A stretch of 64,000 nucleotides of DNA, from positions 248,001 through 312,000 of the IMG/VR virus record IMGVR_UViG_3300029983_000007; one strand, written 5' to 3'. Numbering within the stretch: the first letter of the stretch is position 1; each line of letters begins with the position of its first letter. The position numbers and the translations under genes are program-made. Shown piece by piece: positions 3,801-62,828 of the stretch. The notes beneath the pieces are model-generated. The model saw only the letters and a list, made by a program, of their open reading frames with translations. It did no database searches and was not told where the DNA came from.

Positions 3801-4133
3801 TCATAGATTTTTTAATTTTAATAACTTATATTTACGATATTCATTTTTCCATTTATTATAAGATATTTCAATTCCATTTAAATGATATGTTTCAGTGATA
3901 GAATTTATACATTTTATTAATAGTATAGATGGCCCAAAATAATTATGTAATGCATTATTTTTATAATATGAAATTTCAGATTTGTTATTTAGTTCATGGA
4001 TTATTTTAACATATTTATATTTCTTAATAAAATTTTCTATTTTTTTAACATCATCTTTCTTAACTGAAGAAAATTTTAATGAATGATATTCTATATCGTT
4101 TTCTATTATTATGGTTGATTTGTGATTATTCAT
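3801..4133 (-). CDS. hypothetical protein, LHxxxGP-type repeat, RKxKL tail
   Basis: ALHNYFGPS motif; ends EYRKYKLLKLKNL. Confidence 0.75.
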   Translation of the reverse strand: MNNHKSTIIIENDIEYHSLKFSSVKKDDVKKIENFIKKYKYVKIIHELNNKSEISYYKNNALHNYFGPSILLIKCINSITETYHLNGIEISYNKWKNEYRKYKLLKLKNL

Positions 4134-4443
4134 AAATTGAATTTATTCGTGATTAAATCTAATTCATATTTCTCAATTTCATACTTACCTAATTTTCTTT
4201 CTATTCTATTATTAGTTACCCATAATGAGAAGTTATCAGGAGTTAAACAATGGTAATAAATATATTCACTATGAACAGGAGGATCAATATATATTATTTT
4301 AGTATATCTTGGTTTATTGCCAATAAATCCTTTTGCATATAACTTAACTTAACATAATCATCTATATTATATTTTTGAACTTCGTTATCTTCATTATCTT
4401 CATTTTCATTTAATGCTAGGTTGAACTTTTTTATGTATTTCAT
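4130..4443 (-). pseudogene. frameshifted dual-tagged SH3/KOW-like cassette gene
   Basis: MKYIKKFNL...IDDYVKL then a 5-bp duplication (plus strand aacttaacttaac at 4341-4353); removing one copy gives ...DYVKLYAKGFIG...LITNKFNL*. Confidence 0.75.
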
Positions 4444-4994
4444 AAGTTAAATTTTGATGCAGTAGTTTTTAGTTTATCTATAGTTATTATTTTAGAGCAC
4501 ATAGAATTTTCAAATTTTAATTCTTCAACACCATCTAATTCAACAGAAACAAGAGCACTTTCATTAACATACTGAAATTTTAATCCTTTTATTACACCAG
4601 AATATTTTATATCAGTCATAAAATCAACTGCTCCATCTGATATAAATTTGCCTATAATTTCATCCCTTAAAAATTTTGAATAGTGTTTATTCGGATTGTA
4701 TATTGACATATAAAAATCATGATACAATTTTGATATGTTTATTTTTAGTTCATCTTTAGTTTCTACAAAATTTCTTTCTTTTGTTACTATTTTGAATTTC
4801 TCATATAGTTCTTTTTCGCTAAGTTCATTGAAATCAGAATGTAAATTGTGATATACTTCATCATCTTCTGGATCTATTGTACCACTTTCAAATCCTGGTA
4901 CATCTTGTGGTATATCTTCTTCTTTTCTAGGCTCAAACATATCACCATATTCGCCTCTTAAATCATAGTTTTCAAATTTTTTCAAGTATTTCAT
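4440..4994 (-). CDS. dual-tagged cassette protein
   Basis: MKYLKKFE...ASKFNL. Confidence 0.85.
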   Translation of the reverse strand: MKYLKKFENYDLRGEYGDMFEPRKEEDIPQDVPGFESGTIDPEDDEVYHNLHSDFNELSEKELYEKFKIVTKERNFVETKDELKINISKLYHDFYMSIYNPNKHYSKFLRDEIIGKFISDGAVDFMTDIKYSGVIKGLKFQYVNESALVSVELDGVEELKFENSMCSKIITIDKLKTTASKFNL

Positions 4995-5006
4995 AATAAT
5001 ATATAT

Positions 5007-5039
5007 AAAAAAAAGTTAGTAAAAATTACTAACTTTTTT
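5007..5039. terminator. bidirectional intrinsic terminator
   Basis: aaaagttagta-aaaat-tactaactttt hairpin with A/T tracts. Confidence 0.7.
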
Positions 5040-5295
5040 ATAAATTTGACAACTGTTCTATTTTATCTTTTCTTTCTTGCTGTATTGAAGAAAAAAAATC
5101 ATAATAATAATATTCAGACATACCTATATAAGAATCAACATATTGATTAGATTGATTTAATCTAAATCTATATAACTGATTATCGCATTCAAGTGATATA
5201 AAATCATCTTTTTCAAAAACACTAAAAATGCCTATTATAGTATAATATTCATTCAGTTTAAAACAATTGAAACTTTTTTTACAATGAGCTTTCAT
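5038..5295 (-). CDS. small protein of the MKYLCKK.../RKxKL-tail family
   Basis: MKAHCKKSF start; ends QERKDKIEQLSNL. Confidence 0.75.
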   Translation of the reverse strand: MKAHCKKSFNCFKLNEYYTIIGIFSVFEKDDFISLECDNQLYRFRLNQSNQYVDSYIGMSEYYYYDFFSSIQQERKDKIEQLSNL

Positions 5296-5481
5296 TAATT
5301 TTTTCCTTTCTTAAAAAACTATTAATACCATAATTTTTATTGATATATTTTGCTGTTATTTAGTATTTAATCCAACTAGACTTAAAAATAAATAGCAACA
5401 AAGAATTATCTTAATCTACATATTTGTGAATGTTTGTTGAATCATCAACTTCATTAAAATTATATTTTAAAAATTTTTGAC

Positions 5482-5958
5482 TCATTTCTTTTTCTTTTCA
5501 TGTCTTTTTGTTTTAGATTGATTAAAATTTATACCACTAATACTTGGTTTTGATATACTAAAATCTAAACTATTTGATGATGTTTTAAAATCTTTTTTTA
5601 CATTTTCTGTTTTTTTAATTTCATAACTGTTTTCTAACATTTTAATATCATTAATAAAATCAAGTTGACTTTCATTAGGAGTTTCACATCCTTTATCAAA
5701 CATAATATATTCATCATCAATACTGATATATTTTAAATAATCACTCATATTAAAAATACATTTTGTTGTCTCTCCAAATATCAAATCATTATACTCTGTT
5801 ATTGTCCAAGATTTTGATTCATAATTTTTAAATATATTAATATCATCTTCATTTTTTATAAATATATTAATCCATTCAACATAATCAATAATCATATCTT
5901 TTTGCCTATTACTCATTCCTTTTTTTGAAACAACAAAACTGCTTGATTCAATTTTCAT
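5482..5958 (-). CDS. hypothetical protein
   Basis: 158-aa ORF in minus-strand operon. Confidence 0.7.
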   Translation of the reverse strand: MKIESSSFVVSKKGMSNRQKDMIIDYVEWINIFIKNEDDINIFKNYESKSWTITEYNDLIFGETTKCIFNMSDYLKYISIDDEYIMFDKGCETPNESQLDFINDIKMLENSYEIKKTENVKKDFKTSSNSLDFSISKPSISGINFNQSKTKRHEKKKK

Positions 5959-5999
5959 TTATTTACTATTATTTTTTTAATTTGAATGATTTAAACAAT

Positions 6000-6263
6000 T
6001 TATGATATATTCCATTCAGATTTTATTTTATCTTTTAATAAGACAACACATTTGTTTTTTGTTAGTTCCATAAACAACAATTCTTCTTCTATTTTTGCTT
6101 CTCTCACATATTTCCATTCTGAACATATTTTATATTCTCCTGACTGAGTTCGTCCATGTATGTGTTCACATACTATAGTATATTTTTCTTTATAATTTAA
6201 TGATAAGCAATAAATATCACCATCATTAACATATAGTTTTCTACCTTTTTTATATACTTTCAT
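6000..6263 (-). CDS. hypothetical protein
   Basis: 87-aa ORF abutting gmhA. Confidence 0.7.
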   Translation of the reverse strand: MKVYKKGRKLYVNDGDIYCLSLNYKEKYTIVCEHIHGRTQSGEYKICSEWKYVREAKIEEELLFMELTKNKCVVLLKDKIKSEWNIS

Positions 6264-6266
6264 TAT

Positions 6267-6851
6267 TTATTTTTTGAACATATATTCTTCAACTATTTCA
6301 CAAATGATATGTCCAATCATAATATGAGATTCTTGTATTCTTGGAGTATCTTCTGATGGTACATTAATCATCAAATCACACATTCCTTTAAGCTTACCAC
6401 CATCTTTACCTGTGAATGCAATAGTTATCATTCCTAACTTATTGGCTTCATCACATGCATTTAAAATGTTATTTGAGTTACCTGATGTTGATATTCCTAT
6501 TAATATATCATTTTCTCTACCCATTCCTTTTATTAATCTTGAGTATATATCATCAAACGAATAGTCGTTTGCAACAGCAGTTAAATATGATGTATTTACA
6601 TGTAATGCTTCAGCAAATAATGGATCTCTATCTATATAAAATCTACCAGATAATTCTGCCGCTATATGTTGAGCATCAGCAGCACTACCACCATTACCAC
6701 ACAAAAGAACTTTACCTCCATTTTTAAAGCAAGCAATCAATAAATCAGAAACATCTTTAATTATGCTAATTAAAGTATCATCAGAATATATTAGTTCTTT
6801 GGCATTTATTGATTCTCTTATTATATCTTTAATTTTTTTCATTTTTTTCAT
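6267..6851 (-). CDS. gmhA: phosphoheptose isomerase (SIS domain)
   Basis: CGNGGSAADAQHIAAEL, TAVANDY, ISTSGNS and PRIQESHIMIGH motifs. Confidence 0.95.
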   Translation of the reverse strand: MKKMKKIKDIIRESINAKELIYSDDTLISIIKDVSDLLIACFKNGGKVLLCGNGGSAADAQHIAAELSGRFYIDRDPLFAEALHVNTSYLTAVANDYSFDDIYSRLIKGMGRENDILIGISTSGNSNNILNACDEANKLGMITIAFTGKDGGKLKGMCDLMINVPSEDTPRIQESHIMIGHIICEIVEEYMFKK

Positions 6852-6881
6852 CTCTCTTTATTATCTTCTATCATAAAAATG

Positions 6882-7157
6882 TTATTTTTCTTTAATAGTC
6901 TTTTTAGTAGACTTTTTAGTAGTTGTTTTCTTTTTTACTTCTTTTTTAATAATTCCAATGTCTTTAACTAAAATATACGGTCCTTTAAATGTGTTGCTAG
7001 TGTATGCTTTACATTTATCTATTTCTAATTCAATTAAACATTTTTTGCAATAATTTGTATAGTATTCTCTATCAGGTACTAATGCAACAAAAACTTCTTT
7101 TGATGTAAATTCATTTAAGCACTCTGAACAAACATGAGCATCTTTTTTCTTTGCCAT
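6882..7157 (-). CDS. small putative zinc-finger protein with Lys-rich tail
   Basis: CSEC...YCKKC. Confidence 0.7.
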   Translation of the reverse strand: MAKKKDAHVCSECLNEFTSKEVFVALVPDREYYTNYCKKCLIELEIDKCKAYTSNTFKGPYILVKDIGIIKKEVKKKTTTKKSTKKTIKEK

Positions 7158-7181
7158 ATGTAATTTTATTTTTTAATTCGC

Positions 7182-7213
7182 CAAATATAGTAATTAAATT
7201 ACATATTGACAAA
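7182..7213 (-). promoter_or_regulatory. Bacteroidota sigma-A type promoter
   Basis: Minus strand TTTG-N20-TATATTTG just upstream of 7157. Confidence 0.7.
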
Positions 7214-7223
7214 TGATTTTATA

Positions 7224-7236
7224 TTTTTTATATATA
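7224..7236 (+). promoter_or_regulatory. putative phage late promoter motif TTTTT[AT]ATATATA
   Basis: Same motif precedes most cassette arrays (see findings). Confidence 0.5.
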
Positions 7237-7262
7237 ATAAAACAAGAAACTGAAAATTATAT

Positions 7263-8030
7263 ATGAAATATTTAAAAAGATATGAGAGAGTAATAAGTGA
7301 AAATGATACTGATTATTATGAGTTGGTTAATAAACTTCATGAATTGATACATGCGGTTCAAGTTAATAACATAAACAAAATTAAAATAATTTTAAGTCGA
7401 AATATAAATCTAATTAATCTTTCTGATGGAAATGAAGATAATCCTAAAACACCATTAATAAAATCAATCAATAATAGTATTCGTCTTGATAATGTAACAA
7501 AATTATTAATTGATTTAGGAGCAGATGTAAATATACCAGATGGTAAAGATATTACTCCATTATTTTATGCAATAAGTAAAGGTTATGTAGATGTAGTTGA
7601 ATTATTAATAAATGCTGGAGCAGATGTTAATTATATAATGAAAGACAATTATAAAAAAAGACAATTCAACATTTTTCATAATTCTCCATTATTAAAAGCA
7701 ATAGATTTATATAATATGTGGTATAATGATAAAGAAAAACGTCATGAAGGAGAATACATTAAAATTATAGAATTGTTAATAAATTCTGGAGCTGATTTAG
7801 AATATAAAATCAGAGAGATAACTCCATTATTAGTATCAATATCAACTAAAAGTAAAGACATATCATTTTTGTTAATTGAAGGTGGAGCGAATTTAAATGC
7901 AAAAAATAAAGATGGTGTTGATGCTTTTTCCTTATTGTCTAAATTAGATCAGAAATATGTCATTAAAAATTATTCAAAACAATATGAAAATTATTTATTT
8001 ATTAAAAAAACTGAAAAATTTAATTTATGA
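7263..8030 (+). CDS. dual-tagged ankyrin-repeat protein
   Basis: TPL...LLIxxGADVN repeats; MKYLKRYE...EKFNL. Confidence 0.9.
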   Translation: MKYLKRYERVISENDTDYYELVNKLHELIHAVQVNNINKIKIILSRNINLINLSDGNEDNPKTPLIKSINNSIRLDNVTKLLIDLGADVNIPDGKDITPLFYAISKGYVDVVELLINAGADVNYIMKDNYKKRQFNIFHNSPLLKAIDLYNMWYNDKEKRHEGEYIKIIELLINSGADLEYKIREITPLLVSISTKSKDISFLLIEGGANLNAKNKDGVDAFSLLSKLDQKYVIKNYSKQYENYLFIKKTEKFNL

Positions 8031-8458
8031 AATATATAAAAAAATTTGAAGATAATGACAATGATAATATATTATATCATAAATATGATATAGTAATTAA
8101 TGAGTGGTATAAAACTTTTGAAATTTTTTTAATTTTAAAAGATGTTTATAACTTAGATGAAGAATTTACTTGTATTTATATTGGCAGTATTTGTAAAATT
8201 AATGATATAAATCCATATTATAATATTAGATTTAGTGAATTTGCAGTTAATATAGAAACAAAGATATTAAATTCTGATTATATAAAAATAAATAATAAAT
8301 ATAAAGATTTGATATGTGATGAGATATTTGTTAAAAATGATAAAGCAACAAAACATTATTTAAGTTTAATAGAAATACTTTGCGGTGTTAATTTAAAAGA
8401 TTTACCAGAGTTGAAGAATCATTATTTGAAAATGTCAACTAGCAAATTTAATTTATAA
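8027..8458 (+). CDS. dual-tagged cassette protein
   Basis: MKYIKKFE...TSKFNL. Confidence 0.85.
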   Translation: MKYIKKFEDNDNDNILYHKYDIVINEWYKTFEIFLILKDVYNLDEEFTCIYIGSICKINDINPYYNIRFSEFAVNIETKILNSDYIKINNKYKDLICDEIFVKNDKATKHYLSLIEILCGVNLKDLPELKNHYLKMSTSKFNL

Positions 8459-8470
8459 AAAAACAAAATT

Positions 8471-8929
8471 ATGAAATATTTAGAGAGTTATAAAGAGATA
8501 AATCCAGATGATATTAAAGTTGGTGGATCATATGACAAATTACCAGGAGTAATTATTAGTGATAAACTGTATAATAAAATACCGTATATTATTAATTTTT
8601 TAAATTCAAAAAAAATAAAATTTCAATTGTTTACTAATAATGTATATTTTTTTATCATATTAAATTCTAGTAGTTATCTTGAATTATTACCATATAATTA
8701 CAATACTATGGAACATGTAATTCCTCTTTCAGATGACTATAATGATAAAAACACAGATAATCTGTTAAATAAATTACAATTAAATTGGTATGAAAATAGA
8801 TTCAGAACATATAATAAAGACGTTGAATTTATAGAATTTAAAATTGAAACATCTGATGATATGACAGAATTAAAAGAATATATTGACAACCTTTTAATTA
8901 AAAAAATTGCCAATAAATTTAATCTATAA
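8471..8929 (+). CDS. dual-tagged cassette protein
   Basis: MKYLESYKE...ANKFNL. Confidence 0.85.
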   Translation: MKYLESYKEINPDDIKVGGSYDKLPGVIISDKLYNKIPYIINFLNSKKIKFQLFTNNVYFFIILNSSSYLELLPYNYNTMEHVIPLSDDYNDKNTDNLLNKLQLNWYENRFRTYNKDVEFIEFKIETSDDMTELKEYIDNLLIKKIANKFNL

Positions 8930-8947
8930 AAAATTATATATATCATT

Positions 8948-10318
8948 ATGAGATACATTAAGACATATGAATATTACACACCTATTAAAATAAATAATGA
9001 AAAACCTTTCAAAATTGATGACGATATTGCAGATAAAATTGCATACATACAAGATAGTCTTAATAAACTTAGAAAAAGAGTTCAAAATGAAAAAGATAGA
9101 AAAACTCAAGCTGATTTAAATAGAGAGATAAATGATAAAGTCAAAAGGCTTAGTGATTTGACATTTAAACAAACAAAACAAGTTGCATATTTAAAAAATA
9201 ATCCAATAACAGAAAGTTCTGATATTGTTAATGATACACCAAATCTAATTGAAGTTTTATCATCAAAAAAATTTAAGCCAGAAGATATAGAAAAATATAT
9301 AGGATTTGATGAAGATGAAGCTATGATATGTATAGAAAAAGAACTCAGATATCCTTATAAATCTGATCCCGCATATGATGAACAAGGAGTAACTATAGTA
9401 ATAAACTCTAAAATTCTTGAAGATTTATTTAATATTGAGCATAATTCTTTACAATTTGCTTTGCAATTTAATCACTATAATAGTTATGAATATGATGTTG
9501 ATAGTGATGAATTAAATTACTTGGGTAGTTACACAAAAAAAGAGACAAACGATAAATTAATAAAATTAGCTAAAAAGTTTGGGTTTAAGTTTAAAATAAA
9601 TCCTAAAGAACACGGAGAAATCGTTGATTTTTTTGAATATTTAGGTTTGAATGATGATATAGAAACATTCAAAAATGAAATGAGTATGGCACACGAACGT
9701 GCTGTAGAAGAAGCAGCAAGAGAAACATTGAAAAAAATGCCATTTAATATTGATGACAATAGTAATAGTGATACTGATAGACAAAAATATAATATAGAAT
9801 TAGTATTTGAATATAAAACTATTATAAATTATATGAAAAAATATAAATTAGATGTAAAAACAATTAAAGAGTTTTTATCAAATATATCAGAATCAGATGA
9901 ATTGAGTCCTGAATCAATTGAATATGAAGATAGTTATAGTTATATTAATTATGATGATTTATCAAAATCTATTGATGATGTTGTTGATAAATATTTAGAA
10001 AATCCTGATGACATATTTAAAGTTTGGATTGAAAAAGACAATTTAAATATGTTCAAAAAATTTGAAAAAAAATATGCATTTTATGACTATACATATGATT
10101 TTTGGTTTAATAGCAACAGGCATAGAAATAATTTATTAGTAATGGCTAAATTATATAATGGTAAAATATTAGAATGGTTTAAAACTTATAATTTCCAAAA
10201 ATATTTAATTGGAGATGATATGGATAATTACAAATTATTAAAAAATGCAGAAATACTAAACACAGAAATTGAAAGTGAATTCAGTTATATTGTAAACGCA
10301 GATAAATTTAATATATAA
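8948..10318 (+). CDS. large dual-tagged acidic protein
   Basis: 456 aa; MRYIKTYE...ADKFNI; N-terminal coiled-coil-like segment ending PITE. Confidence 0.85.
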   Translation: MRYIKTYEYYTPIKINNEKPFKIDDDIADKIAYIQDSLNKLRKRVQNEKDRKTQADLNREINDKVKRLSDLTFKQTKQVAYLKNNPITESSDIVNDTPNLIEVLSSKKFKPEDIEKYIGFDEDEAMICIEKELRYPYKSDPAYDEQGVTIVINSKILEDLFNIEHNSLQFALQFNHYNSYEYDVDSDELNYLGSYTKKETNDKLIKLAKKFGFKFKINPKEHGEIVDFFEYLGLNDDIETFKNEMSMAHERAVEEAARETLKKMPFNIDDNSNSDTDRQKYNIELVFEYKTIINYMKKYKLDVKTIKEFLSNISESDELSPESIEYEDSYSYINYDDLSKSIDDVVDKYLENPDDIFKVWIEKDNLNMFKKFEKKYAFYDYTYDFWFNSNRHRNNLLVMAKLYNGKILEWFKTYNFQKYLIGDDMDNYKLLKNAEILNTEIESEFSYIVNADKFNI

Positions 10319-10322
10319 AAAT

Positions 10323-10706
10323 ATGAAACACCTAAGATTATTTGAAAATTTTGAAGATGAAGAAGATATTGATATTTCTGAAGAAGAAGATGATGATGAC
10401 GATGACGATGAAGATTTTGAACATTATACTCATTATAATGAAGGAGATTATGTAAAATTAGACAAAGATGAAAATGAGTGGGATGCTATAGGATTATTTG
10501 CTAAGATAATTGAAGTTAACAGTCATAGGTTAGATGAATACGAAAACGAGATGTTTGAACCAAGGTACAAAGTAAATTCAATTGATAAAAAAACTAACTC
10601 ATTACATGATTTTTGGGTTGGAGAGAGTGAAATTGATTGTAACTTAACACCAGAGGAAATTGAAGAATTTGATTTATTATTGAAAGCAAGTAAATTTAAC
10701 ATATAA
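10323..10706 (+). CDS. dual-tagged SH3/KOW-like protein with acidic linker
   Basis: MKHLRLFE, poly-D/E, EGDYVKL, ASKFNI. Confidence 0.85.
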   Translation: MKHLRLFENFEDEEDIDISEEEDDDDDDDEDFEHYTHYNEGDYVKLDKDENEWDAIGLFAKIIEVNSHRLDEYENEMFEPRYKVNSIDKKTNSLHDFWVGESEIDCNLTPEEIEEFDLLLKASKFNI

Positions 10707-10708
10707 AA

Positions 10709-11197
10709 ATGAAACATATAAAATTATTTGAAAATTTTGAAGATGAACATGATATAGATTTAATCGTTGATAATTATATAGAAGCATTAATTTGGACTCA
10801 AGAAGGTGTTGGAGAAGATGCTGATGGTAATGATCCAATGGATGGTAAAAATATATCAGATATTAATAAAGAATCAAAAGAAGAAATAAAAAAAGAAGTT
10901 GAATGGTTTATTAATTCAGCAGGTGATGTATTTGAAGAACTATCAGATGATCAAATTGGACATGATTTGTGGCTAACAAGAAATGGACATGGATCTGGTT
11001 TTTTTGAAAGAATCGAAGAAAAAGAAAATTTAGAAATAATAGAGGAATTGTGTGATATACTAGGAAATGCTGAAGTTTTTGTAAATGACGATGGTGAAAT
11101 ATATCATGAATCTAATGATAGATATAAAACTTTCAATTTAAAAGAGTATCGAAAGGAAAAAGAATTTGATAAAACAGTAAAGAAATTTAATTTATAA
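10709..11197 (+). CDS. dual-tagged cassette protein
   Basis: MKHIKLFE...VKKFNL; GHDLWLTRNGHGSGF motif. Confidence 0.85.
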   Translation: MKHIKLFENFEDEHDIDLIVDNYIEALIWTQEGVGEDADGNDPMDGKNISDINKESKEEIKKEVEWFINSAGDVFEELSDDQIGHDLWLTRNGHGSGFFERIEEKENLEIIEELCDILGNAEVFVNDDGEIYHESNDRYKTFNLKEYRKEKEFDKTVKKFNL

Positions 11198-11219
11198 CAT
11201 ATTTAAAAAACAATATATT

Positions 11220-11871: not shown

Positions 11872-11902
11872 AAAAAAGAGAGAATCTTTGATTCTCTCTT
11901 TT
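11872..11902. terminator. bidirectional intrinsic terminator
   Basis: aagagagaatc-ttt-gattctctctt between convergent genes. Confidence 0.8.
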
Positions 11903-11936
11903 GCTATTTAGGTTCATTAAATCGCACGGTTTATCT

Positions 11937-12545: not shown

Positions 12546-12548
12546 ATA

Positions 12549-13647: not shown

Positions 13648-13671
13648 TAGAATAATTTAAAATAATATGTT

Positions 13672-14156: not shown

Positions 14157-14158
14157 TT

Positions 14159-14350
14159 ATGAAAAATGTAACATTTTATGTCATTTGCTTTATTATTGGT
14201 ATTATAATAGGATGTATTCCTAGCTTGTTTAAAATTGAATATATATCATTTAAATGGTGGACAATAATTTTAATATCTGACATTTTATTTGTACAAATTT
14301 TAAGTTACATAGATTCAATGATAAAAAATAAAAAGTCAAAATCAAAATGA
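14159..14350 (+). CDS. small membrane protein
   Basis: Two hydrophobic segments. Confidence 0.7.
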   Translation: MKNVTFYVICFIIGIIIGCIPSLFKIEYISFKWWTIILISDILFVQILSYIDSMIKNKKSKSK

Positions 14351-14703
14351 AAGACTTAAAAAATATCACTCAAGAAGAGGTTGAAACAATATGTGAATTA
14401 CTTGAAGAACCATATATAAATCATATGGCTGGACTTTGGAATTATGGGCTGGCAGTTCAAATAATTACAACATCAACTGCAAATAATAACAGAGATGATT
14501 CTTATGTAACCATTTTTTATGATGGAAAAATTAATTTACATAGAAATAATGGTAATTGGGGTGGTATGAGAGATGAATCAATATGTTCTTTGATTATAAC
14601 TGACTACTTGAGAAGTGAAGGCTATGAATTCAAGTATGAAATACCTAAAAAATTAGAAAGAAAGTTTAAATTAAATGAATTAAATAAAATATCTAAACTA
14701 TAA
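14347..14703 (+). CDS. hypothetical protein with RKxKL tail
   Basis: Ends LERKFKLNELNKISKL. Confidence 0.75.
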   Translation: MKDLKNITQEEVETICELLEEPYINHMAGLWNYGLAVQIITTSTANNNRDDSYVTIFYDGKINLHRNNGNWGGMRDESICSLIITDYLRSEGYEFKYEIPKKLERKFKLNELNKISKL

Positions 14704-22159: not shown

Positions 22160-22375
22160 TTATTCACTTATTTCGTTTAACTGTTTTAACTTTTTTTTTC
22201 TTATTTCTTTTTCAGTATAAAAATAATTATTTATATTTGATATGAATATTTCTTCAAAATCATAAAAATAATATTCATTAATAAATATAAATCCGTTATT
22301 ATTCTCATTTTTGCCATAATACATTTTTCCTACTATAAAATTATCATTGTATGCTTTTTTACATAAATATTTCAT
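22160..22375 (-). CDS. small MKYLCKK/RKxKL paralogue
   Basis: MKYLCKKAY...FYTEKEIRKKKLKQL. Confidence 0.8.
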   Translation of the reverse strand: MKYLCKKAYNDNFIVGKMYYGKNENNNGFIFINEYYFYDFEEIFISNINNYFYTEKEIRKKKLKQLNEISE

Positions 22376-22622
22376 TTAATTTTTTCAATTTAAGTTTTCT
22401 GTTTTCTCCAATATTAATAAAATAATCTTTTAATTTTGGTTCTAAATTTCCAGACACAACAAATTTGGTATTACAAACAAAAATATATTCATATGCTAAA
22501 TATTTATTTTTCAATCTAATATTGCTTAGATTATATTTATTAAGATGAATAATATTATCACTATGATAATATTCTCCTGATTTAATATAACTAGAATAAG
22601 TTTTTATACATTTTAATCTCAT
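22359..22622 (-). CDS. small MKYLCKK/RKxKL paralogue
   Basis: MRLKCIKTY...ENRKLKLKKL. Confidence 0.8.
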   Translation of the reverse strand: MRLKCIKTYSSYIKSGEYYHSDNIIHLNKYNLSNIRLKNKYLAYEYIFVCNTKFVVSGNLEPKLKDYFINIGENRKLKLKKLNEIFM

Positions 22623-22629: not shown

Positions 22630-22854
22630 CTACTGTAATTTTTTCAATTTTATTTTTCGTATTTCTTTTTCAGTATAAAAATAATCTTTTAATTTTGGTT
22701 CTGCAATTCCATCAATTACAAATTTATATCCTTTTAGATTAATATATTTAAAAAAAGAACCTGATAATAAATAATCAGAATGAATAATATCATCACAACT
22801 GCAATAATTTCCAACATTAATGTTTCTATATGTTTTTTTACATAAATATCTCAT
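22630..22854 (-). CDS. small MKYLCKK/RKxKL paralogue
   Basis: MRYLCKKTY...FYTEKEIRKIKLKKL. Confidence 0.8.
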   Translation of the reverse strand: MRYLCKKTYRNINVGNYCSCDDIIHSDYLLSGSFFKYINLKGYKFVIDGIAEPKLKDYFYTEKEIRKIKLKKLQ

Positions 22855-22889: not shown

Positions 22890-23114
22890 TTATTTAATAT
22901 TACACAATATTTCTAATTTTATTTTTCGTATTTCTTTTTCACTATAAAAATAATCATTTATTTTTGGAGAACAATATAGATTATTATCATCTGTTAAAAA
23001 AAGTAAACTATTTATTTGAATCATTTTAGAATTAGTTAAAATAACACAATCATAAAATTTTCCAATAATAATATCTTTTGAATATGTTTTTTTGCATAGA
23101 TATTTCATTTGCAC
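22890..23114 (-). CDS. small MKYLCKK/RKxKL paralogue
   Basis: MKYLCKKTY...FYSEKEIRKIKLEIL; ATG probably 23108. Confidence 0.8.
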   Translation of the reverse strand: MQMKYLCKKTYSKDIIIGKFYDCVILTNSKMIQINSLLFLTDDNNLYCSPKINDYFYSEKEIRKIKLEILCNIK

Positions 23115-27794: not shown

Positions 27795-28121
27795 CTATTC
27801 TTCTATTATATTACCTAATTTATCTAACTTAGTCTTTCTTACATACTGAACACATTCATCATAATATTTTTTACAATCTCTATTATAAAAAGTTTCTACA
27901 TTCTGCCGTCCTTTCTCATTTGCTTCTTTAACAACATCTTTTAAGCATTCTTCACAACAGTATGACCACAATGTACTCATTCTAGTATCATCACCAAGAA
28001 AAACTGAAAATTCTTGTTTATGAGTTTTGCAGTTGTTACATAATATTGAACTTGTTCCTGAATATCCTACTATAACATGACTAAATAGTTTATAATATTC
28101 ATTTTTATCTGGTTTTTTCAT
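27795..28121 (-). CDS. putative zinc-finger protein with RKxKL tail
   Basis: Start reassigned to MKKPDK; CNNC...CCEEC; VRKTKLDKL. Confidence 0.7.
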   Translation of the reverse strand: MKKPDKNEYYKLFSHVIVGYSGTSSILCNNCKTHKQEFSVFLGDDTRMSTLWSYCCEECLKDVVKEANEKGRQNVETFYNRDCKKYYDECVQYVRKTKLDKLGNIIEE

Positions 28122-28122
28122 A

Positions 28123-28539
28123 TTATAATATAAATCCAAATTTGATACCAATTCCTGTGCTATTAGTATAAAATACACTAGTAATCAATGTATTTTCATA
28201 AATATATCCTATCTCTGCTCCTCCACTAAATAATTGTTTATTACTTACTAATTTAATATCATTTTGAGGTGTTGCACACATACCAGCTAACCCCATAATA
28301 TAAAAATTAGAATCAAAAACATAACCTATTCCATAATTAAAATAATCTGGTAGTCTATCATCAACTGGTAATGATATGCTTAAACATTGATAAATTGATT
28401 TTTCAGAAATATATCCAAAATCTACACCAACTGATTTGCTAGAGTATGATAATTTTGTGATTAACTTAGTCTGATCATTTTGTGAAAACATTGAAATTGA
28501 TATAAATAACAATACAATGATTAATTTAAAGTTTTTCAT
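28123..28539 (-). CDS. putative secreted/outer-membrane beta-strand protein
   Basis: Signal-peptide-like N-terminus, alternating G/aromatic strands, ends FGFIL. Confidence 0.7.
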   Translation of the reverse strand: MKNFKLIIVLLFISISMFSQNDQTKLITKLSYSSKSVGVDFGYISEKSIYQCLSISLPVDDRLPDYFNYGIGYVFDSNFYIMGLAGMCATPQNDIKLVSNKQLFSGGAEIGYIYENTLITSVFYTNSTGIGIKFGFIL

Positions 28540-28832
28540 AATTTATTTAATTTATTTAATTTTTTCCTTCTCAAAAATTGCTCAATTTTCATATCAAGAA
28601 GTTGTTTACTAACAAAATAACTACCTCTTCCTGCGGTATAATCACACTGATCAAGCCATAATTCAAATGATATTCCGTCATCTTCAATATTTTCATGAAT
28701 AATACTAGAATATTTTCCAAATTGACCAGATTTATTTAAAATTTCAGTAGCCAATTCTAAATATTGTTCTGTAATAGAATCAGCTTTAATTATTAATTTT
28801 GATCTTTTTTCAAATGTTTCGTCGTAGTTCAT
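28536..28832 (-). CDS. hypothetical protein with RKxKL tail
   Basis: Ends LRRKKLNKLNKL. Confidence 0.75.
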   Translation of the reverse strand: MNYDETFEKRSKLIIKADSITEQYLELATEILNKSGQFGKYSSIIHENIEDDGISFELWLDQCDYTAGRGSYFVSKQLLDMKIEQFLRRKKLNKLNKL

Positions 28833-55363: not shown

Positions 55364-55677
55364 AATATATAAAATCATTTGAAAAAATAAATAATACAAT
55401 TCATTATAAAATTCCAGCATATCCGTTAGAAGTATATTTTATTGCAATAACTAAAATTGGTATGACACAAGATGAAATATCTCATTGGATTAATAATAAA
55501 TACGCTCAATATTGGAATAACTCACATTTTAAATTTATATATTTAAATAACACATACAATGATTATACTAAAAAATATCAATGGAGTTGGACAAATAACA
55601 TAAATAAAGCAAATGAGACTGTAATAGAAATAACTGTTGAAGATTATGAAATTGATGCAAACAAATTTAACATATGA
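55360..55677 (+). CDS. dual-tagged cassette protein
   Basis: MKYIKSFE...ANKFNI; related to 19868..20206. Confidence 0.85.
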   Translation: MKYIKSFEKINNTIHYKIPAYPLEVYFIAITKIGMTQDEISHWINNKYAQYWNNSHFKFIYLNNTYNDYTKKYQWSWTNNINKANETVIEITVEDYEIDANKFNI

Positions 55678-57238: not shown

Positions 57239-57546
57239 AACACATTAAAACATTTGAAAATAATTATGAATATGCAGAAGTTGGAGATTATGTTATTATT
57301 AATGTGAATAATCTAAAATTCAGCAATGATAATATAGGTAATATTTACAAGAAAATGTTAACTGATAATGTATATAAAATAATTGACAGTAAAATAGTAT
57401 CAGGAAACAGACAAATATATCTAATTGATTTATATGACGATGAACATATTAACGGATATTATATTGATAGTAAGAATGTATTAGCATTTGATAAAGATAA
57501 AGAATTTGTTAAATGTAAAAATGATATAAACAAATATAATTTATAA
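57235..57546 (+). CDS. dual-tagged SH3/KOW-like protein
   Basis: EVGDYVII; INKYNL. Confidence 0.85.
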   Translation: MKHIKTFENNYEYAEVGDYVIINVNNLKFSNDNIGNIYKKMLTDNVYKIIDSKIVSGNRQIYLIDLYDDEHINGYYIDSKNVLAFDKDKEFVKCKNDINKYNL

Positions 57547-57876
57547 AATATTTAATTTTTCTAACTTCCTCTTTCTTTGAATTGATTTATAATCAAAATG
57601 CTCAATTATTTCTTCTTCAGTTAATAAGGCTAAATTACAATTACGATTAGAATAAATATATATTTCTGATTCTACTGTATAACATTTATATTCAAGGCAA
57701 TAATGTGCATATTTATATTTATTACCTTTTATAAATGTGTGATTTTGAAAACCTAAATCATATTTTGTCCAATCATCTAATGATATTAGAATATCTCCTA
57801 CACTTAAATCAAGCTTATTCATATCTATTAATTTTATATCAAACAAAGATACAAAATATTTTTGGTTAAATAACAT
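57541..57876 (-). CDS. hypothetical protein with RKxKL tail
   Basis: Ends IQRKRKLEKLNIL; real start may be MNKLDL. Confidence 0.7.
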   Translation of the reverse strand: MLFNQKYFVSLFDIKLIDMNKLDLSVGDILISLDDWTKYDLGFQNHTFIKGNKYKYAHYCLEYKCYTVESEIYIYSNRNCNLALLTEEEIIEHFDYKSIQRKRKLEKLNIL

Positions 57877-58834: not shown

Positions 58835-60295
58835 ATGAATAATAGAAACTTCATATTACATATAAAAGAAGATAAATACAAAAAATTATTAATTGATTAT
58901 ATTTTTAAATATCGTCAATTCGAAAACTTATATCTTATAATATTAAAAGAGAATAAGGATGATTTTAATTTTTTATCTAATTATAAAGTAATGAGAGCTA
59001 TTCTTGCGGAAACTACTGGAGGTAAAGATAAAAATGAAGTTGATTTTATTAGATATAAATATAAAGAAAATGATAAAATGAATGAATTAATTATTTTATC
59101 AAAAAGTCTTAAAATACATAATATTTCAGATTTGATTAAAAGAGTAAAATCAAATTATAAATCTTTTTTCACTAAAATAAGAAATAAAGTTAAAGCCAAC
59201 GTTCCATGTACAAAAAAGTTATCACTATTGACTAAATATTCCATTCTAGTTGATAAAATTGCATTTTCAATAAAGAAAAAGGATAAAATTGGAATCAACT
59301 TGAGTAATAAAATGTTTTATATTGATTTTAAGCATAAAATATTACCAGATAATATACAAAGTCTTAAAGTCGTTTACTCAAATAAAGAAGTTTATTTACA
59401 TTTTAATTACTTGACTGAAGATATATTAAACACAAATAATTCATTAATAAAAGAAGCAGGAATAGATGTAGGTATTAATAATTTATTAGCTATATTTATT
59501 GATGATAAAACATCTAAATCAATAATTGTTGACGGAAATATTTTTAAAACTTATAATTCAAAATTCAACAGGTTCTTGTCTAAACTTAATGAATCAATTT
59601 CTAAAGAAGTCATAGAATTTAAACTCAGTAATACTGGTACTAAATATGCAGTTAAGTGGACTAAAAGAGGAATAGAATTACGTAAATATAAGACATTTAT
59701 TTATGAAAAAAGAAATCGTTATTTTTATGATCAATTTCATAAAGTTAGTAAACGTGTGGTTGAATTATTGAAATTAAATTCTGTAAACAATCTAACAATT
59801 TCATACAATCTAGCTAGATTAAAATATAATGGTGATTGTAAATTAAATAAAAAAGTAAAACAAAATTTCATACAAATTCCTTTCATAAAACTACTAAATT
59901 ACATTCAATATAAAAGTAATGAAGTTGGAATTCAAGTAGATATAATTGATGAATCTTACACATCAAAGTGCTCATGTATTAGTGATAATGTGAATGATCC
60001 GTTAGATAAAGAACTAAATGGTGTTCGTTCTAAAAGAGATTTATTTACTGATAAACTAATAAATAAAACAATGAATGCTGATTTGAACGGTGCTGTCAAT
60101 CATATAAAAAAATCAAACAAAAATAATAATTTTTCTTGGTTGGAAAATTATATGTTTAAACTGTGTAATCCAGTTAAAATTAAATGCGACTACGATTTCT
60201 TTAAATATTTAAAGAATAGTGTGCTCTGGCAAGGAATTTCATCAAAAGAAGTTCAAACGTCACTTCATGTACAAAATTGTACAAGTTTAAGTTGA
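58835..60295 (+). CDS. tnpB: TnpB-like RNA-guided endonuclease (IS200/IS605 family)
   Basis: RuvC motifs AGIDVGINNL, DESYTSK, NADLNGA; no tnpA nearby. Confidence 0.88.
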   Translation: MNNRNFILHIKEDKYKKLLIDYIFKYRQFENLYLIILKENKDDFNFLSNYKVMRAILAETTGGKDKNEVDFIRYKYKENDKMNELIILSKSLKIHNISDLIKRVKSNYKSFFTKIRNKVKANVPCTKKLSLLTKYSILVDKIAFSIKKKDKIGINLSNKMFYIDFKHKILPDNIQSLKVVYSNKEVYLHFNYLTEDILNTNNSLIKEAGIDVGINNLLAIFIDDKTSKSIIVDGNIFKTYNSKFNRFLSKLNESISKEVIEFKLSNTGTKYAVKWTKRGIELRKYKTFIYEKRNRYFYDQFHKVSKRVVELLKLNSVNNLTISYNLARLKYNGDCKLNKKVKQNFIQIPFIKLLNYIQYKSNEVGIQVDIIDESYTSKCSCISDNVNDPLDKELNGVRSKRDLFTDKLINKTMNADLNGAVNHIKKSNKNNNFSWLENYMFKLCNPVKIKCDYDFFKYLKNSVLWQGISSKEVQTSLHVQNCTSLS

Positions 60296-60952: not shown

Positions 60953-61333
60953 TTAATTAAAGCTAAAGTTAAAAAATAAAAAATTTAAAATATCATCACA
61001 TTTCCTTATAGAATTAATGAACTCTAATCTATTTTGATATAATGCTTCTAAACCAATTGAAATACCATCAAACTCTTCTAATTTATACTTAGTCCTTGGT
61101 ACATTAAAATAATCATAACCACCAAAAATTTTATGAGTTATCATAGATATATTAGCAAGACAAAAGTGTGTTCTCAAATCAGGTTGTAAGTAAGTATTGT
61201 TAATCTCACTCACTTCCTTTAATGCATATTCTATAAGCTTCCTTTCAACAATATTACGAACAATACCATTAAACTCTATTTGGTGAGTATCAATTGTTAA
61301 TTCTTCTTCTGGTGGATAAACTGCTACTGACAT
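60953..61333 (-). CDS. hypothetical protein
   Basis: Under TATCTTTG box at 61372-61379. Confidence 0.75.
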   Translation of the reverse strand: MSVAVYPPEEELTIDTHQIEFNGIVRNIVERKLIEYALKEVSEINNTYLQPDLRTHFCLANISMITHKIFGGYDYFNVPRTKYKLEEFDGISIGLEALYQNRLEFINSIRKCDDILNFLFFNFSFN

Positions 61334-61426
61334 AATTATAGTGTTTTTTAATTGTTTGACTTAATTGAATACAAAGATACCACATATAATTAATATATGT
61401 GGTATCTTAAAAGTTAAATAATATTA

Positions 61427-61828
61427 TTAATAACTAATATGTATTAAAACGCTATTTCTTACTATGGCTTTTTTAAGAATATCTATAAATTCTGCATGTT
61501 CTTCATCAGTCCAATGCTTATTTTCTTTCATTAAACTTTTTATGTTTATAATATCGCTCTCTTTCATATTTACAATACAATCATTGAGTTCATTATTTTT
61601 ATAGAAAGATTCTTTATCATCTTTTATAATTCCATACTCTCCAATCAAATAAGATAGAAGAACCCAATTATTTCTAAGATAGTAAATCTCTGTTACTAAT
61701 TTCTCAAAGTCTTCAAATATGATTGAATCTTTTTTTTGTTCATCACTATATTCTACATCTTCATATATAACTGGAGTAACTTCCTTATATGAATCCTTTG
61801 TTTTATAAAATGTTATATCAAGTCCCAT
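61427..61828 (-). CDS. phage hypothetical protein (MGLD-start family)
   Basis: MGLDITF...EIYYLRNNW. Confidence 0.75.
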   Translation of the reverse strand: MGLDITFYKTKDSYKEVTPVIYEDVEYSDEQKKDSIIFEDFEKLVTEIYYLRNNWVLLSYLIGEYGIIKDDKESFYKNNELNDCIVNMKESDIINIKSLMKENKHWTDEEHAEFIDILKKAIVRNSVLIHISY

Positions 61829-61830
61829 AA

Positions 61831-62124
61831 TTATGTTGTTTTTTCTTTGTGTCTAATCATCAATCCAGTACCACTTGGAGAATTTAAGCAATAATATATT
61901 TCCAGATTATGAGTAACTAAATATCTAATTAATCCATTATATTCTTCTGCTGATACTTCTTTTGATTTTTGTGCTCTCAATTCTGTACCATCAATAAATC
62001 CTTTTGAATACCCTAACTTTCTACCATTCTCAAATGATTCAGTATCATTTTTGTATTTTAAAAGAGTAATTTTAATTCTCATCTCGCATATCATATTAAA
62101 GATATAATCAAAAAATTTTTTCAT
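61831..62124 (-). CDS. hypothetical protein
   Basis: 97 aa. Confidence 0.7.
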   Translation of the reverse strand: MKKFFDYIFNMICEMRIKITLLKYKNDTESFENGRKLGYSKGFIDGTELRAQKSKEVSAEEYNGLIRYLVTHNLEIYYCLNSPSGTGLMIRHKEKTT

Positions 62125-62332
62125 TTGATATTTTATTTAATTTACGTTTTCTATATTCTGATAATGTTATAAATTCATGATATTCAGTTATAAAAACAAC
62201 ATCTTTAAATTCAAGAAATTCAAAAGCAGTTTCATTATTACCAATACAAATAATATGTAATGGTTTAAAAAGTGGAAAATCATTATTCATAACTTTATTA
62301 TTAGTACAAATTACTATATCACCTATTTTCAT
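62108..62332 (-). CDS. SH3/KOW-like protein with RKxKL tail
   Basis: Start reassigned to MKIGDIVIC; EYRKRKLNKI. Confidence 0.72.
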   Translation of the reverse strand: MKIGDIVICTNNKVMNNDFPLFKPLHIICIGNNETAFEFLEFKDVVFITEYHEFITLSEYRKRKLNKISNEKIF

Positions 62333-62508
62333 AATCCTATTGTCCAATCAATTGGTCCTTCTTCAATATAAACACTTTCATACTTTGTTTGAAGTTCATC
62401 AAAAATGCTACTAATTAGTTCATATTCAGAAACTGTTAAATATCTCTCAATTCTCATATTATCTGTTCCAGATATTTCAAGATTATATAATTTTTTTTCG
62501 GTTTCCAT
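62329..62508 (-). CDS. small hypothetical protein (not in ORF track)
   Basis: METEKKLYNLEISG...GPIDWTIGL*; TAATG and ATGA overlaps on its two sides. Confidence 0.6.
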   Translation of the reverse strand: METEKKLYNLEISGTDNMRIERYLTVSEYELISSIFDELQTKYESVYIEEGPIDWTIGL

Positions 62509-62828
62509 TATATTTTTGGTTTTAAATTTTTAACTTTTTTTCTTCTTAAATATTTTTCAATAACATCAACACCAATTGTATCTAAAAATTTATCATCAAT
62601 TAAAGCCTTAGGATTCATATAGTATTCCCATCCGTCAGCCCACTCATGTAAATTAAAGTCATGATGAAGATCCATAAAAATTTTACTTTTAGTAAATATA
62701 ACATAGATTCTATTATTAAGTATTCCTAAAAATATCATTTCTTCTCCTAAATAAGAACCATCATCTCCATGTGATCTTTCTGTTCTAACTATGCTATCTC
62801 CTTTTTTGAATTTTAAAATTGAACTCAT
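62508..62828 (-). CDS. SH3/KOW-like protein with RRKK tail
   Basis: FKKGDSIV; YLRRKKVKNL. Confidence 0.72.
   Translation of the reverse strand: MSSILKFKKGDSIVRTERSHGDDGSYLGEEMIFLGILNNRIYVIFTKSKIFMDLHHDFNLHEWADGWEYYMNPKALIDDKFLDTIGVDVIEKYLRRKKVKNLKPKI

What the first reader, a model, noticed from the sequence alone, without database searches (positions are those of the whole stretch)
3801..62828. A second, mutually exclusive C-terminal motif (R[KR]xK[LIV]xxL) on about 12 other small proteins
Seen: tails EYRKYKLLKL (3801), ERKDKIEQL (5038), ERKFKLNEL (14347), IRKKKLKQL (22160), NRKLKLKKL (22359), IRKIKLKKL (22630), IRKIKLEIL (22890), VRKTKLDKL (27795), LRRKKLNKL (28536), QRKRKLEKL (57541), YRKRKLNKI (62108), LRRKKVKNL (62508). 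None carries the KFN tail. Several lie in operons with host-type TAnnTTTG boxes upstream rather than the TATATA motif, and bodies again differ (zinc finger, SH3-like, MKYLCKK family). Inference: the phage uses two tagging codes, KFN[IL] for late/virion cargo and a basic amphipathic helix for early proteins that dock on one shared partner such as a membrane, nucleic acid or scaffold.
Basis: partly seen in the sequence, partly recalled or inferred. Interest (0 to 1): 0.62.

Follow-up and report, generated by a model that had tools for sequence, protein, structure and literature searches.

The report
Shared C-terminal helix tag in huge phage
About one in seven proteins of this huge, AT-rich phage ends in the same 12-residue helix (K-x-[IL]-R-K-x-K-L-x-K-L-N), attached to unrelated protein bodies and selected at the protein level. 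It looks like an undescribed address or docking tag, probably on early-expressed proteins, but its partner is unknown.

Summary
All 12 tails in the window translate as described. In the 330-kb record that holds the window, 73-94 of 594 ORFs carry R-[KR]-x-K-[LIV]-x-x-[LIVM] 1-9 residues before the stop. Composition predicts about 0.5 and shuffled tails give at most 4.

Conservation is at the protein level: codon use inside the motif equals the genome background. It is also stereospecific: the Arg is never Lys, and the Lys three residues later is never Arg.

The tail sits on very different bodies (63 BLAST clusters). AlphaFold2 predicts an SH3-like barrel for one family and a three-helix bundle for another, each ending in this helix. 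One body type occurs with either tail, and the DUF6794 domain lacks the tail in cellular homologues.

RK and KFN genes almost never share a transcription unit. KFN units carry a TTTWATATAW box also found at tail-fibre genes; only RK units carry full Bacteroidota-type promoters.

The tail is virus-specific: many IMG/VR contigs and 5,835 cluster representatives, a variant in huge phage LR745206, none in T4, and essentially none as a tail in prokaryote genomes. Pfam, PHROGs, PDB and the literature gave no match.

Best reading: a modular docking helix for one shared partner, which remains unidentified.

The parts
3801..4133 (-). 110-aa ORF with RK tail ...NEYRKYKLLKLKNL; motif codons at 3813-3836
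5038..5295 (-). 85-aa ORF, SH3-like body by HMM, tail ...QQERKDKIEQLSNL; motif codons at 5050-5073
14347..14703 (+). 118-aa ORF, tail ...KLERKFKLNELNKISKL; motif codons at 14659-14682
22160..22375 (-). 71-aa ORF of the MKYLCKK paralogue array, tail ...KEIRKKKLKQLNEISE; motif codons at 22178-22201; its start codon lies inside the tail region of the upstream gene (17-nt overlap)
22359..22622 (-). 87-aa ORF of the same array, tail ...GENRKLKLKKLNEIFM; motif codons at 22377-22400
22630..22854 (-). 74-aa ORF of the same array, tail ...KEIRKIKLKKLQ; motif codons at 22636-22659
22890..23114 (-). 74-aa ORF of the same array, tail ...KEIRKIKLEILCNIK; motif codons at 22905-22928
27795..28178 (-). 127-aa Cys-rich ORF (start uncertain), tail ...QYVRKTKLDKLGNIIEE; motif codons at 27816-27839
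28536..28832 (-). 98-aa ORF, tail ...QFLRRKKLNKLNKL; motif codons at 28548-28571
57541..57876 (-). 111-aa ORF, tail ...SIQRKRKLEKLNIL; motif codons at 57553-57576
62108..62347 (-). 79-aa ORF (74 aa from the ATG at 62332). AlphaFold2 predicts a five-strand SH3-like barrel plus C-terminal helix 57-72 that carries ...SEYRKRKLNKISNEKIF; motif codons at 62129-62152
62508..62828 (-). 106-aa ORF, tail ...KYLRRKKVKNLKPKI (Val at position 4); motif codons at 62523-62546

Best explanation
The RK tail is a portable, protein-level module of about 12 residues: K(-3)-x-[IL](-1)-R(0)-K-x-K(3)-L-x-K-L-N(8). It forms the last turns of a C-terminal alpha-helix and has been attached to many unrelated small proteins of a clade of AT-rich huge phages. 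Most likely it is a docking or address helix. One face, carrying R0, K3, L4, L7 and N8, fits a site on a single shared partner, so that dozens of different bodies are brought to the same place or machine. The bodies are mostly accessory ORFans in transcription units with host-type promoters, so probably early.

Shown: the motif exists; it is far above chance; it is C-terminal; it is selected as amino acids; R0 and K3 are non-interchangeable; the bodies are diverse; the tail is modular; RK and KFN genes are transcriptionally segregated; the tail is restricted to viruses.

Inferred: that it binds one partner; that the class is early; what follows binding (tethering to a compartment, scaffold, chaperone or protease, or timed removal).
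For: (1) Chance is excluded: 73-76 tails observed against 0.46 expected, and shuffles reach at most 4.
(2) Selection is on the protein. Arg codons are AGA 86%, AGG 5% and CGN 9%. Leu codons are TTA, TTG, CTT and CTA. Lys AAG is 10-14%. All match genome background. None of the 20 largest direct DNA-repeat families in the window is an RK tail.
(3) Recognition is specific. KKxK, KRxK and RKxR tails number 0, although Lys is four times commoner than Arg in this proteome.
(4) The tail sits on unrelated bodies: 63 BLAST clusters among 76 proteins, and 148 non-SH3 clusters among 310 tailed proteins. In those 148 clusters the positions not fixed by the regex are still conserved (K6 in 90/148, N8 in 73/148, K-3 in 55/148). 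The variable positions 2, 5 and 9 lie on one helical face.
(5) Two different predicted folds end in the same helix: an SH3-like barrel (pLDDT 85) and a three-helix bundle (pLDDT 90).
(6) The tail is modular. The SH3-like body also occurs with the KFN tail (window 38198-38545 and another gene). DUF6794 carries the tail in viral copies but not in the Capnocytophaga and Bacteroidales copies.
(7) In the SH3-like family only R, K and one Phe are at least 90% conserved. The helix's polar residues are therefore more conserved than any body residue they could contact.
(8) Segregation from KFN genes and the promoter contrast.
(9) The tail is virus-specific. A 27-nt pattern gives in-frame C-terminal tails in nearly all of 67 IMG/VR stretches, but in about 1 of 55 matches in 596 Gb of prokaryote genomes.
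Against: - No partner was found.
- Only about half of the phage genome is held.
- The single complex job (homodimer) gave no verdict.
- The largest tailed family is an SH3-like barrel, where a C-terminal helix can be part of the fold (weak PWWP and YorP matches). For that family, intramolecular packing cannot be excluded, because model contacts could not be inspected.
- Tandem paralogue arrays inflate the counts.
- The 'early' class rests on regex promoter proxies. 51 of 85 RK genes got no promoter call, and the -7 box alone is not significantly enriched.
- Downstream start codons cluster just after the motif, which leaves room for a translational role.
Confidence: 0.5

Rival explanations
1. 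The helix is a structural capping helix without a common partner. It began as part of an SH3/Tudor-like barrel-plus-helix fold and spread by tandem duplication, rapid divergence of the bodies and 3'-anchored recombination. Its conservation then reflects folding or stability, or its use as a recombination joint.
For: 31 of 94 tailed proteins have SH3-like bodies, and this family is very large (5,835 cluster representatives; 124 of the 150 best carry the tail). Barrel-plus-helix folds rank first in Foldseek. Many tailed genes lie in tandem arrays, with starts inside the previous tail.
Against: The best-conserved positions are polar (R0, K3, K6, N8) and stay conserved on an all-alpha fold and in 148 non-SH3 clusters. 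No body residue except one Phe is comparably conserved. The same body accepts a KFN tail instead. Codon use shows no nucleotide-level constraint, and the tails are not among the large DNA-repeat families.
Confidence: 0.2
2. The tail acts in cis during translation. Either the nascent peptide in the exit tunnel or the A-rich mRNA tunes termination and re-initiation on the overlapping downstream gene, in a host that lacks Shine-Dalgarno pairing.
For: In 73 RK genes that have a same-strand neighbour, the next start codon sits just after the motif in the +1 frame. The offset from the Arg codon is 25 nt in 14 cases, and many others fall at 28-37 nt. 33 of the 73 overlap by 8-23 nt, which is a large share of all long overlaps in the genome. 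The distance from motif to stop is narrow, 1-9 residues.
Against: 12 tailed genes have no same-strand downstream gene and about 20 have one more than 35 nt away. Codon use equals background, and CGN Arg codons and CTN Leu codons are tolerated, so an RNA signal is unlikely. The offset to the next start varies. The tail persists in fusion proteins where it is internal. A nascent-peptide effect is not excluded.
Confidence: 0.12
3. The tail is a generic basic amphipathic helix that binds membrane or nucleic acid by charge. These were two of the first reader's suggestions.
For: The tail's net charge is about +3 on slightly acidic bodies. The pattern is amphipathic, with L4, L7 and I10/11.
Against: Arg and Lys are not interchangeable at positions 0 and 3. 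The invariant Arg lies in the middle of the hydrophobic face. Only three or four aliphatic residues are present. Huge phage LR745206 and other contigs use R-[DEN]-x-K-[IL]-[DE]-x-I-L, which is near neutral.
Confidence: 0.08
4. The tails zip together, so tailed proteins form homo- or hetero-oligomers through a short coiled coil.
For: The hydrophobic spacing i, i+3, i+7 resembles a heptad.
Against: There are only about 1.5 heptads, the flanks are strongly basic and would repel, and a conserved Arg sits at a core position.
Confidence: 0.05
5. The motif is a by-product of Lys/Leu/Asn-rich composition in a 24% G+C genome.
For: K, I, N and L are the commonest residues.
Against: There is a 150-fold excess over composition and over shuffles, with strict C-terminal placement. 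The profile finds no tails in LR756501 (about 31% G+C in the stretches read) or in T4, and a regex check of about 60 kb of LR756501 found 0 in 91 genes. Prokaryote genomes hold almost no C-terminal matches.
Confidence: 0.01

Closest known systems
Encapsulin cargo-loading peptides and bacterial-microcompartment encapsulation peptides (established knowledge, recalled, not tested here)
   Same: A short terminal peptide or amphipathic helix shared by unrelated proteins, which brings them all to one protein partner; it is modular and can be added to any body.
   Different: Those tags bind a co-encoded shell protein. No shell or receptor is known here. The sequence is unrelated. There are about 90 carriers per half-genome rather than a handful, and the carriers appear to be early accessory proteins.
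Poxvirus ankyrin/PRANC (F-box-like) proteins (established knowledge, recalled)
   Same: A large viral multigene set with variable bodies and a short conserved C-terminal helical motif that docks on one hub.
   Different: PRANC binds the eukaryotic Skp1-cullin complex. Here the virus is a phage, the bodies belong to many folds, and the hub is unknown.
ClpX-tethering and ClpX-recognition tails (SspB XB peptide, MuA-type C-motif 2) (established knowledge, recalled)
   Same: Basic-plus-aliphatic C-terminal peptides that connect diverse proteins to one unfoldase.
   Different: Those act at or next to the free C-terminus. Here 1-9 variable residues follow the motif. No ClpP and no clear AAA+ gene occur in the held half of the genome. 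The host is unknown.
SH3/Tudor/PWWP-like barrel with a C-terminal helix (for example B. subtilis prophage protein YorP, PDB 2heq; PWWP 6kco)
   Same: The largest tailed family is predicted as a five-strand barrel followed by a helix. These are the best Foldseek matches.
   Different: The matches are weak (E 0.03-0.07, TM about 0.5). There is no Pfam hit. The RK helix also occurs on non-barrel folds.
Phage T4 capsid targeting sequence (established knowledge, recalled)
   Same: A short phage-encoded peptide shared by several proteins that sends them to one destination.
   Different: It is N-terminal, cleaved, carried by late proteins and used by few proteins. T4 has no RK-type tail.

Membership tests
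Any curated protein family (Pfam-A, PHROGs) | Significant profile match covering the tail or the tailed proteins | tested here: not met
   The 10 window proteins scanned (two of the MKYLCKK array were not) gave no Pfam hit at or above a gathering score and no PHROG hit at E<=0.01. Of 30 further tailed proteins scanned against Pfam, only DUF6794 (two proteins, body only) passed its cut-off; a gp32-like hit stayed below cut-off.
Solved structures carrying the tail | PDB chain matching the tail profile | tested here: not met
   Profile A2 against 177,635 PDB sequences gave one marginal hit (E 0.1), at the C-terminus of an AT-rich ciliate mitochondrial protein. It is probably chance.
SH3/Tudor/PWWP-like barrel plus C-terminal helix (body of the largest tailed family) | Five-strand barrel followed by a helix that packs on it | tested here: inconclusive
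   The AlphaFold2 model has strands 6-9, 24-30, 36-39, 46-48 and 54-56, and helix 57-72, with pLDDT 84.7. The Foldseek best matches are PWWP, YorP, SH3 and Tudor, at E 0.03-0.2. Helix-barrel contacts could not be read.
Terminal targeting or encapsulation peptide systems (encapsulin, microcompartment) | Short terminal helix shared by unrelated cargo proteins | tested here: met
Terminal targeting or encapsulation peptide systems (encapsulin, microcompartment) | Co-encoded shell or receptor that binds the peptide | not tested
   No candidate was identified, and the record is about 46% complete.
ClpX C-motif 2 / XB-type tails | Motif at the extreme C-terminus next to the free carboxylate | tested here: not met
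   1-9 variable residues, most often 3-6, follow the motif.
Membrane-targeting amphipathic helix (MinD/FtsA type) | Charge-driven binding, so Lys and Arg are interchangeable, with a broad hydrophobic face | tested here: not met
   R0 is never K and K3 is never R. Near-neutral RD variants exist. Binding itself was not assayed.
Leucine-zipper or coiled-coil oligomerisation motif | At least 3-4 heptads with an apolar core | tested here: not met
   Only L4, L7 and I10/11 are apolar, and a conserved Arg sits at a core position. The complex job gave no verdict.
Repeated DNA element at gene ends | Nucleotide-level conservation beyond what the amino acids require | tested here: not met
   Codon use equals background. 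The tails are absent from the 20 largest direct-repeat families, whereas the KFN junction is among them.

The most novel reading that the evidence does not exclude
Huge phages of this clade run a proteome-wide, two-code C-terminal address system. The RK helix marks about 15% of proteins (the early, host-promoter class) for one dedicated receptor: a phage-built compartment or scaffold, or a remodelling or degradation machine. Through it, many fast-evolving host-takeover or anti-defence bodies are delivered, or removed on schedule. A second code (KFN) marks another 15%, made from phage-type promoters. The RxxK[IL]xx[IL] variant in LR745206 would make this a general, unrecognised feature of several huge-phage lineages.
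Probability: 0.3. Interest if true: 0.85.

Novelty: new variant of a known kind. Interest (0 to 1): 0.72.

Why it matters
Most genes of huge phages are ORFans with no handle for experiments. A strict 12-residue tag shared by about 90 proteins per half-genome, and by thousands of metagenomic proteins, gives such a handle. One peptide could be used to fish out a partner, to sort unknown genes into functional or temporal classes from sequence alone, and perhaps to send foreign proteins to the same destination. If the partner is a host hub or a phage-built compartment, the tag would show how a phage of about 0.7 Mb organises its early programme. It is also a clean case of a short linear motif spreading across unrelated folds within a virus lineage.

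Tried and rejected
- **Composition artefact:** rejected.
- **DNA repeat, promoter or RNA signal as the conserved object:** rejected for the RK tail on codon usage and the repeat search. The same tests suggest a nucleotide-level component for the KFN junction.
- **Classical NLS (K-[KR]-x-[KR]) resemblance:** considered and set aside. Gene organisation is phage- and bacteria-like, with overlapping operons, tail-fibre genes and Bacteroidota-type promoters, so there is no importin context.
- **Host pathway using the same tag:** no support. The 27-nt pattern almost never forms a C-terminal tail in 185,579 prokaryote species genomes.
- **Phage-encoded Clp protease or AAA+ unfoldase as receptor:** none found in the held half of the genome. 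This is not evidence of absence.
- **Complex prediction homodimer of the SH3-like tailed protein:** no verdict (ipSAE 0.00). It counts neither way.
- **Close relatives among cultured phages:** none by megablast or tblastn.
- **Word-based protein searches:** found only near-identical metagenomic copies.
- **Literature searches for the motif or for a shared phage C-terminal tag:** nothing relevant.
- **Foldseek of the all-alpha family:** no match.
- **jackhmmer from an all-alpha member:** drifted to all tailed proteins through the tail alone, so it was not used for family assignment.
- **The look-up of sequencing runs for expression evidence:** It was not pursued by other means.

Full report
**Setting**

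The window is bases 248001-312000 of a single 330,208-bp virus record with 24% G+C. CheckV rates the record about 46% complete, and one of its proteins also occurs on a 711-kb contig. The virus is therefore probably a huge phage of about 0.7 Mb, recovered repeatedly from JGI, ENA and Logan metagenome assemblies. It encodes collagen-like tail-fibre proteins and a family-B-like DNA polymerase. Its nearest public relatives, by one protein only, are the 635-735-kb uncultured phages LR745206 and LR756501-3. Many intergenic regions carry TTG-N17-21-TAnnTTTG boxes, the Bacteroidota promoter type (promoter type from established knowledge). A DUF6794 domain in one phage protein occurs in Capnocytophaga and Bacteroidales genomes but in none of 14 control genomes. 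A Bacteroidota host is likely but not shown.

All twelve ORFs translate with the quoted tails. On 594 ORFs called by a longest-ORF rule, R[KR].K[LIV]..[LIVM] occurs 87 times against 2.2 expected. 73-76 ORFs have it within their last 20 residues. Tail composition predicts 0.46, and 500 shuffles of the tails give a mean of 0.62 and a maximum of 4. The motif ends 1-9 residues before the stop, most often 3-6. With position 1 relaxed, 94 ORFs qualify. A six-frame profile search gives 79 matches here, none in T4, none in LR756501 and two weak ones in LR745206. The KFN[IL]-stop tail is carried by 92 other proteins with no overlap.

**Protein or nucleic acid?**

- Inside the motif, Arg is AGA 86%, AGG 5% and CGN 9% (background 76, 8 and 16%).
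- Leu uses TTA, TTG, CTT and CTA at background ratios.
- Lys AAG is 10-14% at positions 1 and 3 (2% at position 6), against a background of 11.5%.
- No RK tail is among the 20 largest direct-repeat families of the window.
- The KFN end behaves differently. Its Asn codon is AAC in 52% against a 14% background. It is also part of a 40-60-nt repeat spanning the stop of one gene and the conserved MKYIKxFE start of the next, with 33 copies in the window.

The RK tail is therefore conserved as amino acids. The KFN junction is at least partly conserved as DNA.

**How specific is it?**

Lys is four times commoner than Arg in this proteome. Even so, no C-terminal tail has Lys at position 0 or Arg at position 3, and position 4 is never aromatic. 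I took one representative from each of 148 body clusters outside the SH3-like superfamily. In these, positions the regex does not fix are still conserved: K6 in 90/148, N8 in 73/148, K-3 in 55/148 and I/L-1 in 71/148. Positions 2, 5 and 9, which fall on one helical face, vary. The portable unit is thus K-x-[IL]-R-K-x-K-L-x-K-L-N. The upstream F-[IY]-[ST] belongs only to the SH3-like family.

**What carries it?**

- The bodies fall into 63 BLAST clusters among 76 proteins, and into 149 phmmer clusters among 310 tailed proteins from this genome plus IMG/VR loci.
- One superfamily (31 of the 94 tailed ORFs here by a body-only HMM) is predicted as a five-strand SH3-like barrel followed by helix 57-72, which bears the motif (pLDDT 84.7). 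Its best fold matches are weak: PWWP, YorP, SH3 and Tudor.
- A profile of this family finds 5,835 cluster representatives among 1.84 billion. 124 of the 150 best carry the strict tail.
- A second family is all-alpha, with three helices. The motif ends the last helix (pLDDT 90.4), and no PDB fold matches it.
- Other carriers reach 293 residues. They include a DUF6794 protein, a Cys-rich protein and conserved proteins of about 220 residues. All but DUF6794 lack Pfam and PHROG matches.

**Is the tail modular?**

- Two SH3-like-body proteins end in KFN instead of RK, one of them at window 38198-38545.
- Viral DUF6794 proteins from two distant contigs carry the tail after the domain. The cellular Capnocytophaga and Bacteroidales proteins do not.
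- In the SH3-like alignment only R, K and one Phe reach 90% conservation. No body residue is conserved enough to be the fixed intramolecular partner of R0 and K3.

**Genomic organisation**

I grouped genes into transcription units: same strand, gaps under 40 nt. 45 units hold only RK genes (90 genes), 26 hold only KFN genes (89 genes) and 2 hold both. TTTWATATAW lies upstream of 2/45 RK units and 16/26 KFN units (p 1.7e-7). A full host-type promoter lies upstream of 8/45 and 0/26 (p 0.023). The TATATA-type box also precedes tail-fibre-like and other large genes, so it is probably a phage-specific middle or late promoter. 'Early' for RK and 'late' for KFN are inferences from these motifs.

**Distribution**

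- A 27-nt pattern for RKxKLxKLN hits 67 IMG/VR stretches at 20-31% G+C. Nearly all matches are in-frame C-terminal tails, with up to 23-24 tailed ORFs per 12-15 kb. Several of these contigs also carry KFN tails.
- The same pattern hits 55 places in 596 Gb of prokaryote genomes. Almost all are internal or out of frame.
- LR745206 carries a variant, R-[DEN]-x-K-[IL]-x-x-[IL]-L, on 30 of 162 genes in 100 kb (shuffle mean 1.2). This sample was partly chosen for SH3-like hits. LR756501 has 0 of 91.
- A pattern for RDxKIDxIL gives 8 IMG/VR hits, all C-terminal.

The invariant core across lineages is R-x-x-K-h-x-x-h. Basic charge is not conserved.

**Mechanism**

The polar residues are conserved and non-interchangeable, they lie on one face of a terminal helix, and they recur on unrelated folds. 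This points to a common external ligand with a defined site, that is, a docking or address helix. Generic charge-driven binding is disfavoured by the R/K specificity and the neutral variants. A purely structural helix is disfavoured by conservation across folds and by the lack of conserved contacts in the bodies, though it cannot be excluded for the barrel family.

A translational role deserves mention. In 73 RK genes with a same-strand neighbour, the next start codon lies just after the motif in the +1 frame, often made from the AAT of N8 plus a following G. 33 of the 73 overlap by 8-23 nt. This may simply explain why 1-9 arbitrary residues follow the motif. Tails are kept where no downstream gene follows, and codon use shows no RNA constraint, so an RNA signal is unlikely. 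A nascent-peptide effect remains possible.

What follows docking is unknown. It could be tethering to a compartment or scaffold, hand-over to a chaperone or protease, or timed removal. No ClpP or clear AAA+ gene lies in the held half of the genome. The one complex prediction allowed (homodimer) gave no verdict.

**Comparison and novelty**

In function the tail most resembles terminal targeting peptides (encapsulin and microcompartment cargo tags), the poxvirus ANK/PRANC arrangement, and ClpX-tethering tails. These comparisons come from established knowledge, not from tests here. It is not a member of any of them: the sequence is unrelated, no receptor is known, and the strictly terminal placement required for ClpX tags is not met. 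Pfam, PHROGs, the PDB profile search and the literature searches returned nothing for the motif. I rate it a new variant of a known kind of system (shared terminal docking tag). It is unusual in its scale and in being paired with a second, mutually exclusive tail class.

**Caveats**

- Gene calls and promoter calls come from simple rules.
- Counts include paralogue arrays.
- Only half the genome is available.
- Model contacts could not be inspected.
- The host and the timing of expression are inferred.

Noticed in passing
window 32933-33368 (-), also 32598-32699 (-): Full-length match to the GOLLD RNA family (RF02032; 243 bits, E 5e-69) plus a partial second copy. Both lie in an ORF-poor stretch of about 3.8 kb (32503-36340).
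   Followed up: partly
window 34795-36768: Six or seven copies of an 87-104-nt direct repeat (63-93% identical to the reference copy) in the same ORF-poor stretch, spaced 100-590 nt apart. They could be promoters or units of further non-coding RNAs.
   Followed up: no
window, for example 595-654, 17540-17599, 55336-55395 (33 copies): The KFN[IL]-stop tail is part of a 40-60-nt DNA repeat across gene junctions: ...AAATTTAAC[AT]TATGAAATATATAAAAAMATTTGAA..., that is, NKFN[IL]-stop overlapping MKYIKxFE of the next gene. Asn is AAC in 52% there against a 14% background, and 50 of 92 junctions are ATGA overlaps. KFN proteins therefore share a conserved N-terminus as well, and the signal is partly at nucleotide level.
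   Followed up: partly
window 38198-38545 (-): 115-aa protein whose body matches the SH3-like body profile (E 5e-4) but which ends in KFNL instead of the RK helix. The same body type can carry either tail.
   Followed up: partly
window 58835-60295 (+): 486-aa gene with precomputed Pfam hits OrfB_IS605 and Cas12f1-like_TNB, so a TnpB-type transposon-associated nuclease inside the phage.
   Followed up: no
window 39298-40941 (+): 547-aa protein, 42-44% identical over half its length to proteins of the 635-735-kb uncultured phages LR745206 and LR756501-3. More distant matches are annotated polyphosphate:AMP phosphotransferase in Acinetobacter phage records.
   Followed up: no
whole record (G000), 330,208 bp: CheckV completeness is about 46%, and an identical protein lies on a 711,471-bp contig. 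The virus is probably a huge phage of about 0.7 Mb, found in many JGI, ENA and Logan metagenome assemblies.
   Followed up: partly
G000 218252-218992 (-), 225537-225881 (-), 68912-69355 (-), 208038-208799 (-): A few ORFs carry the RK motif internally. At 218252-218992 an SH3-like-plus-tail unit is followed by 83 more residues. These look like fusions of a tailed gene with its downstream neighbour.
   Followed up: no
phage record LR745206.1, for example bases 1-20000 (locus L146): This published 635-kb huge phage carries a variant C-terminal tail, R-[DEN]-x-K-[IL]-x-x-[IL]-L, on many small proteins (14 in the first 20 kb). The 735-kb LR756501.1 shows none in the 60 kb read.
   Followed up: partly
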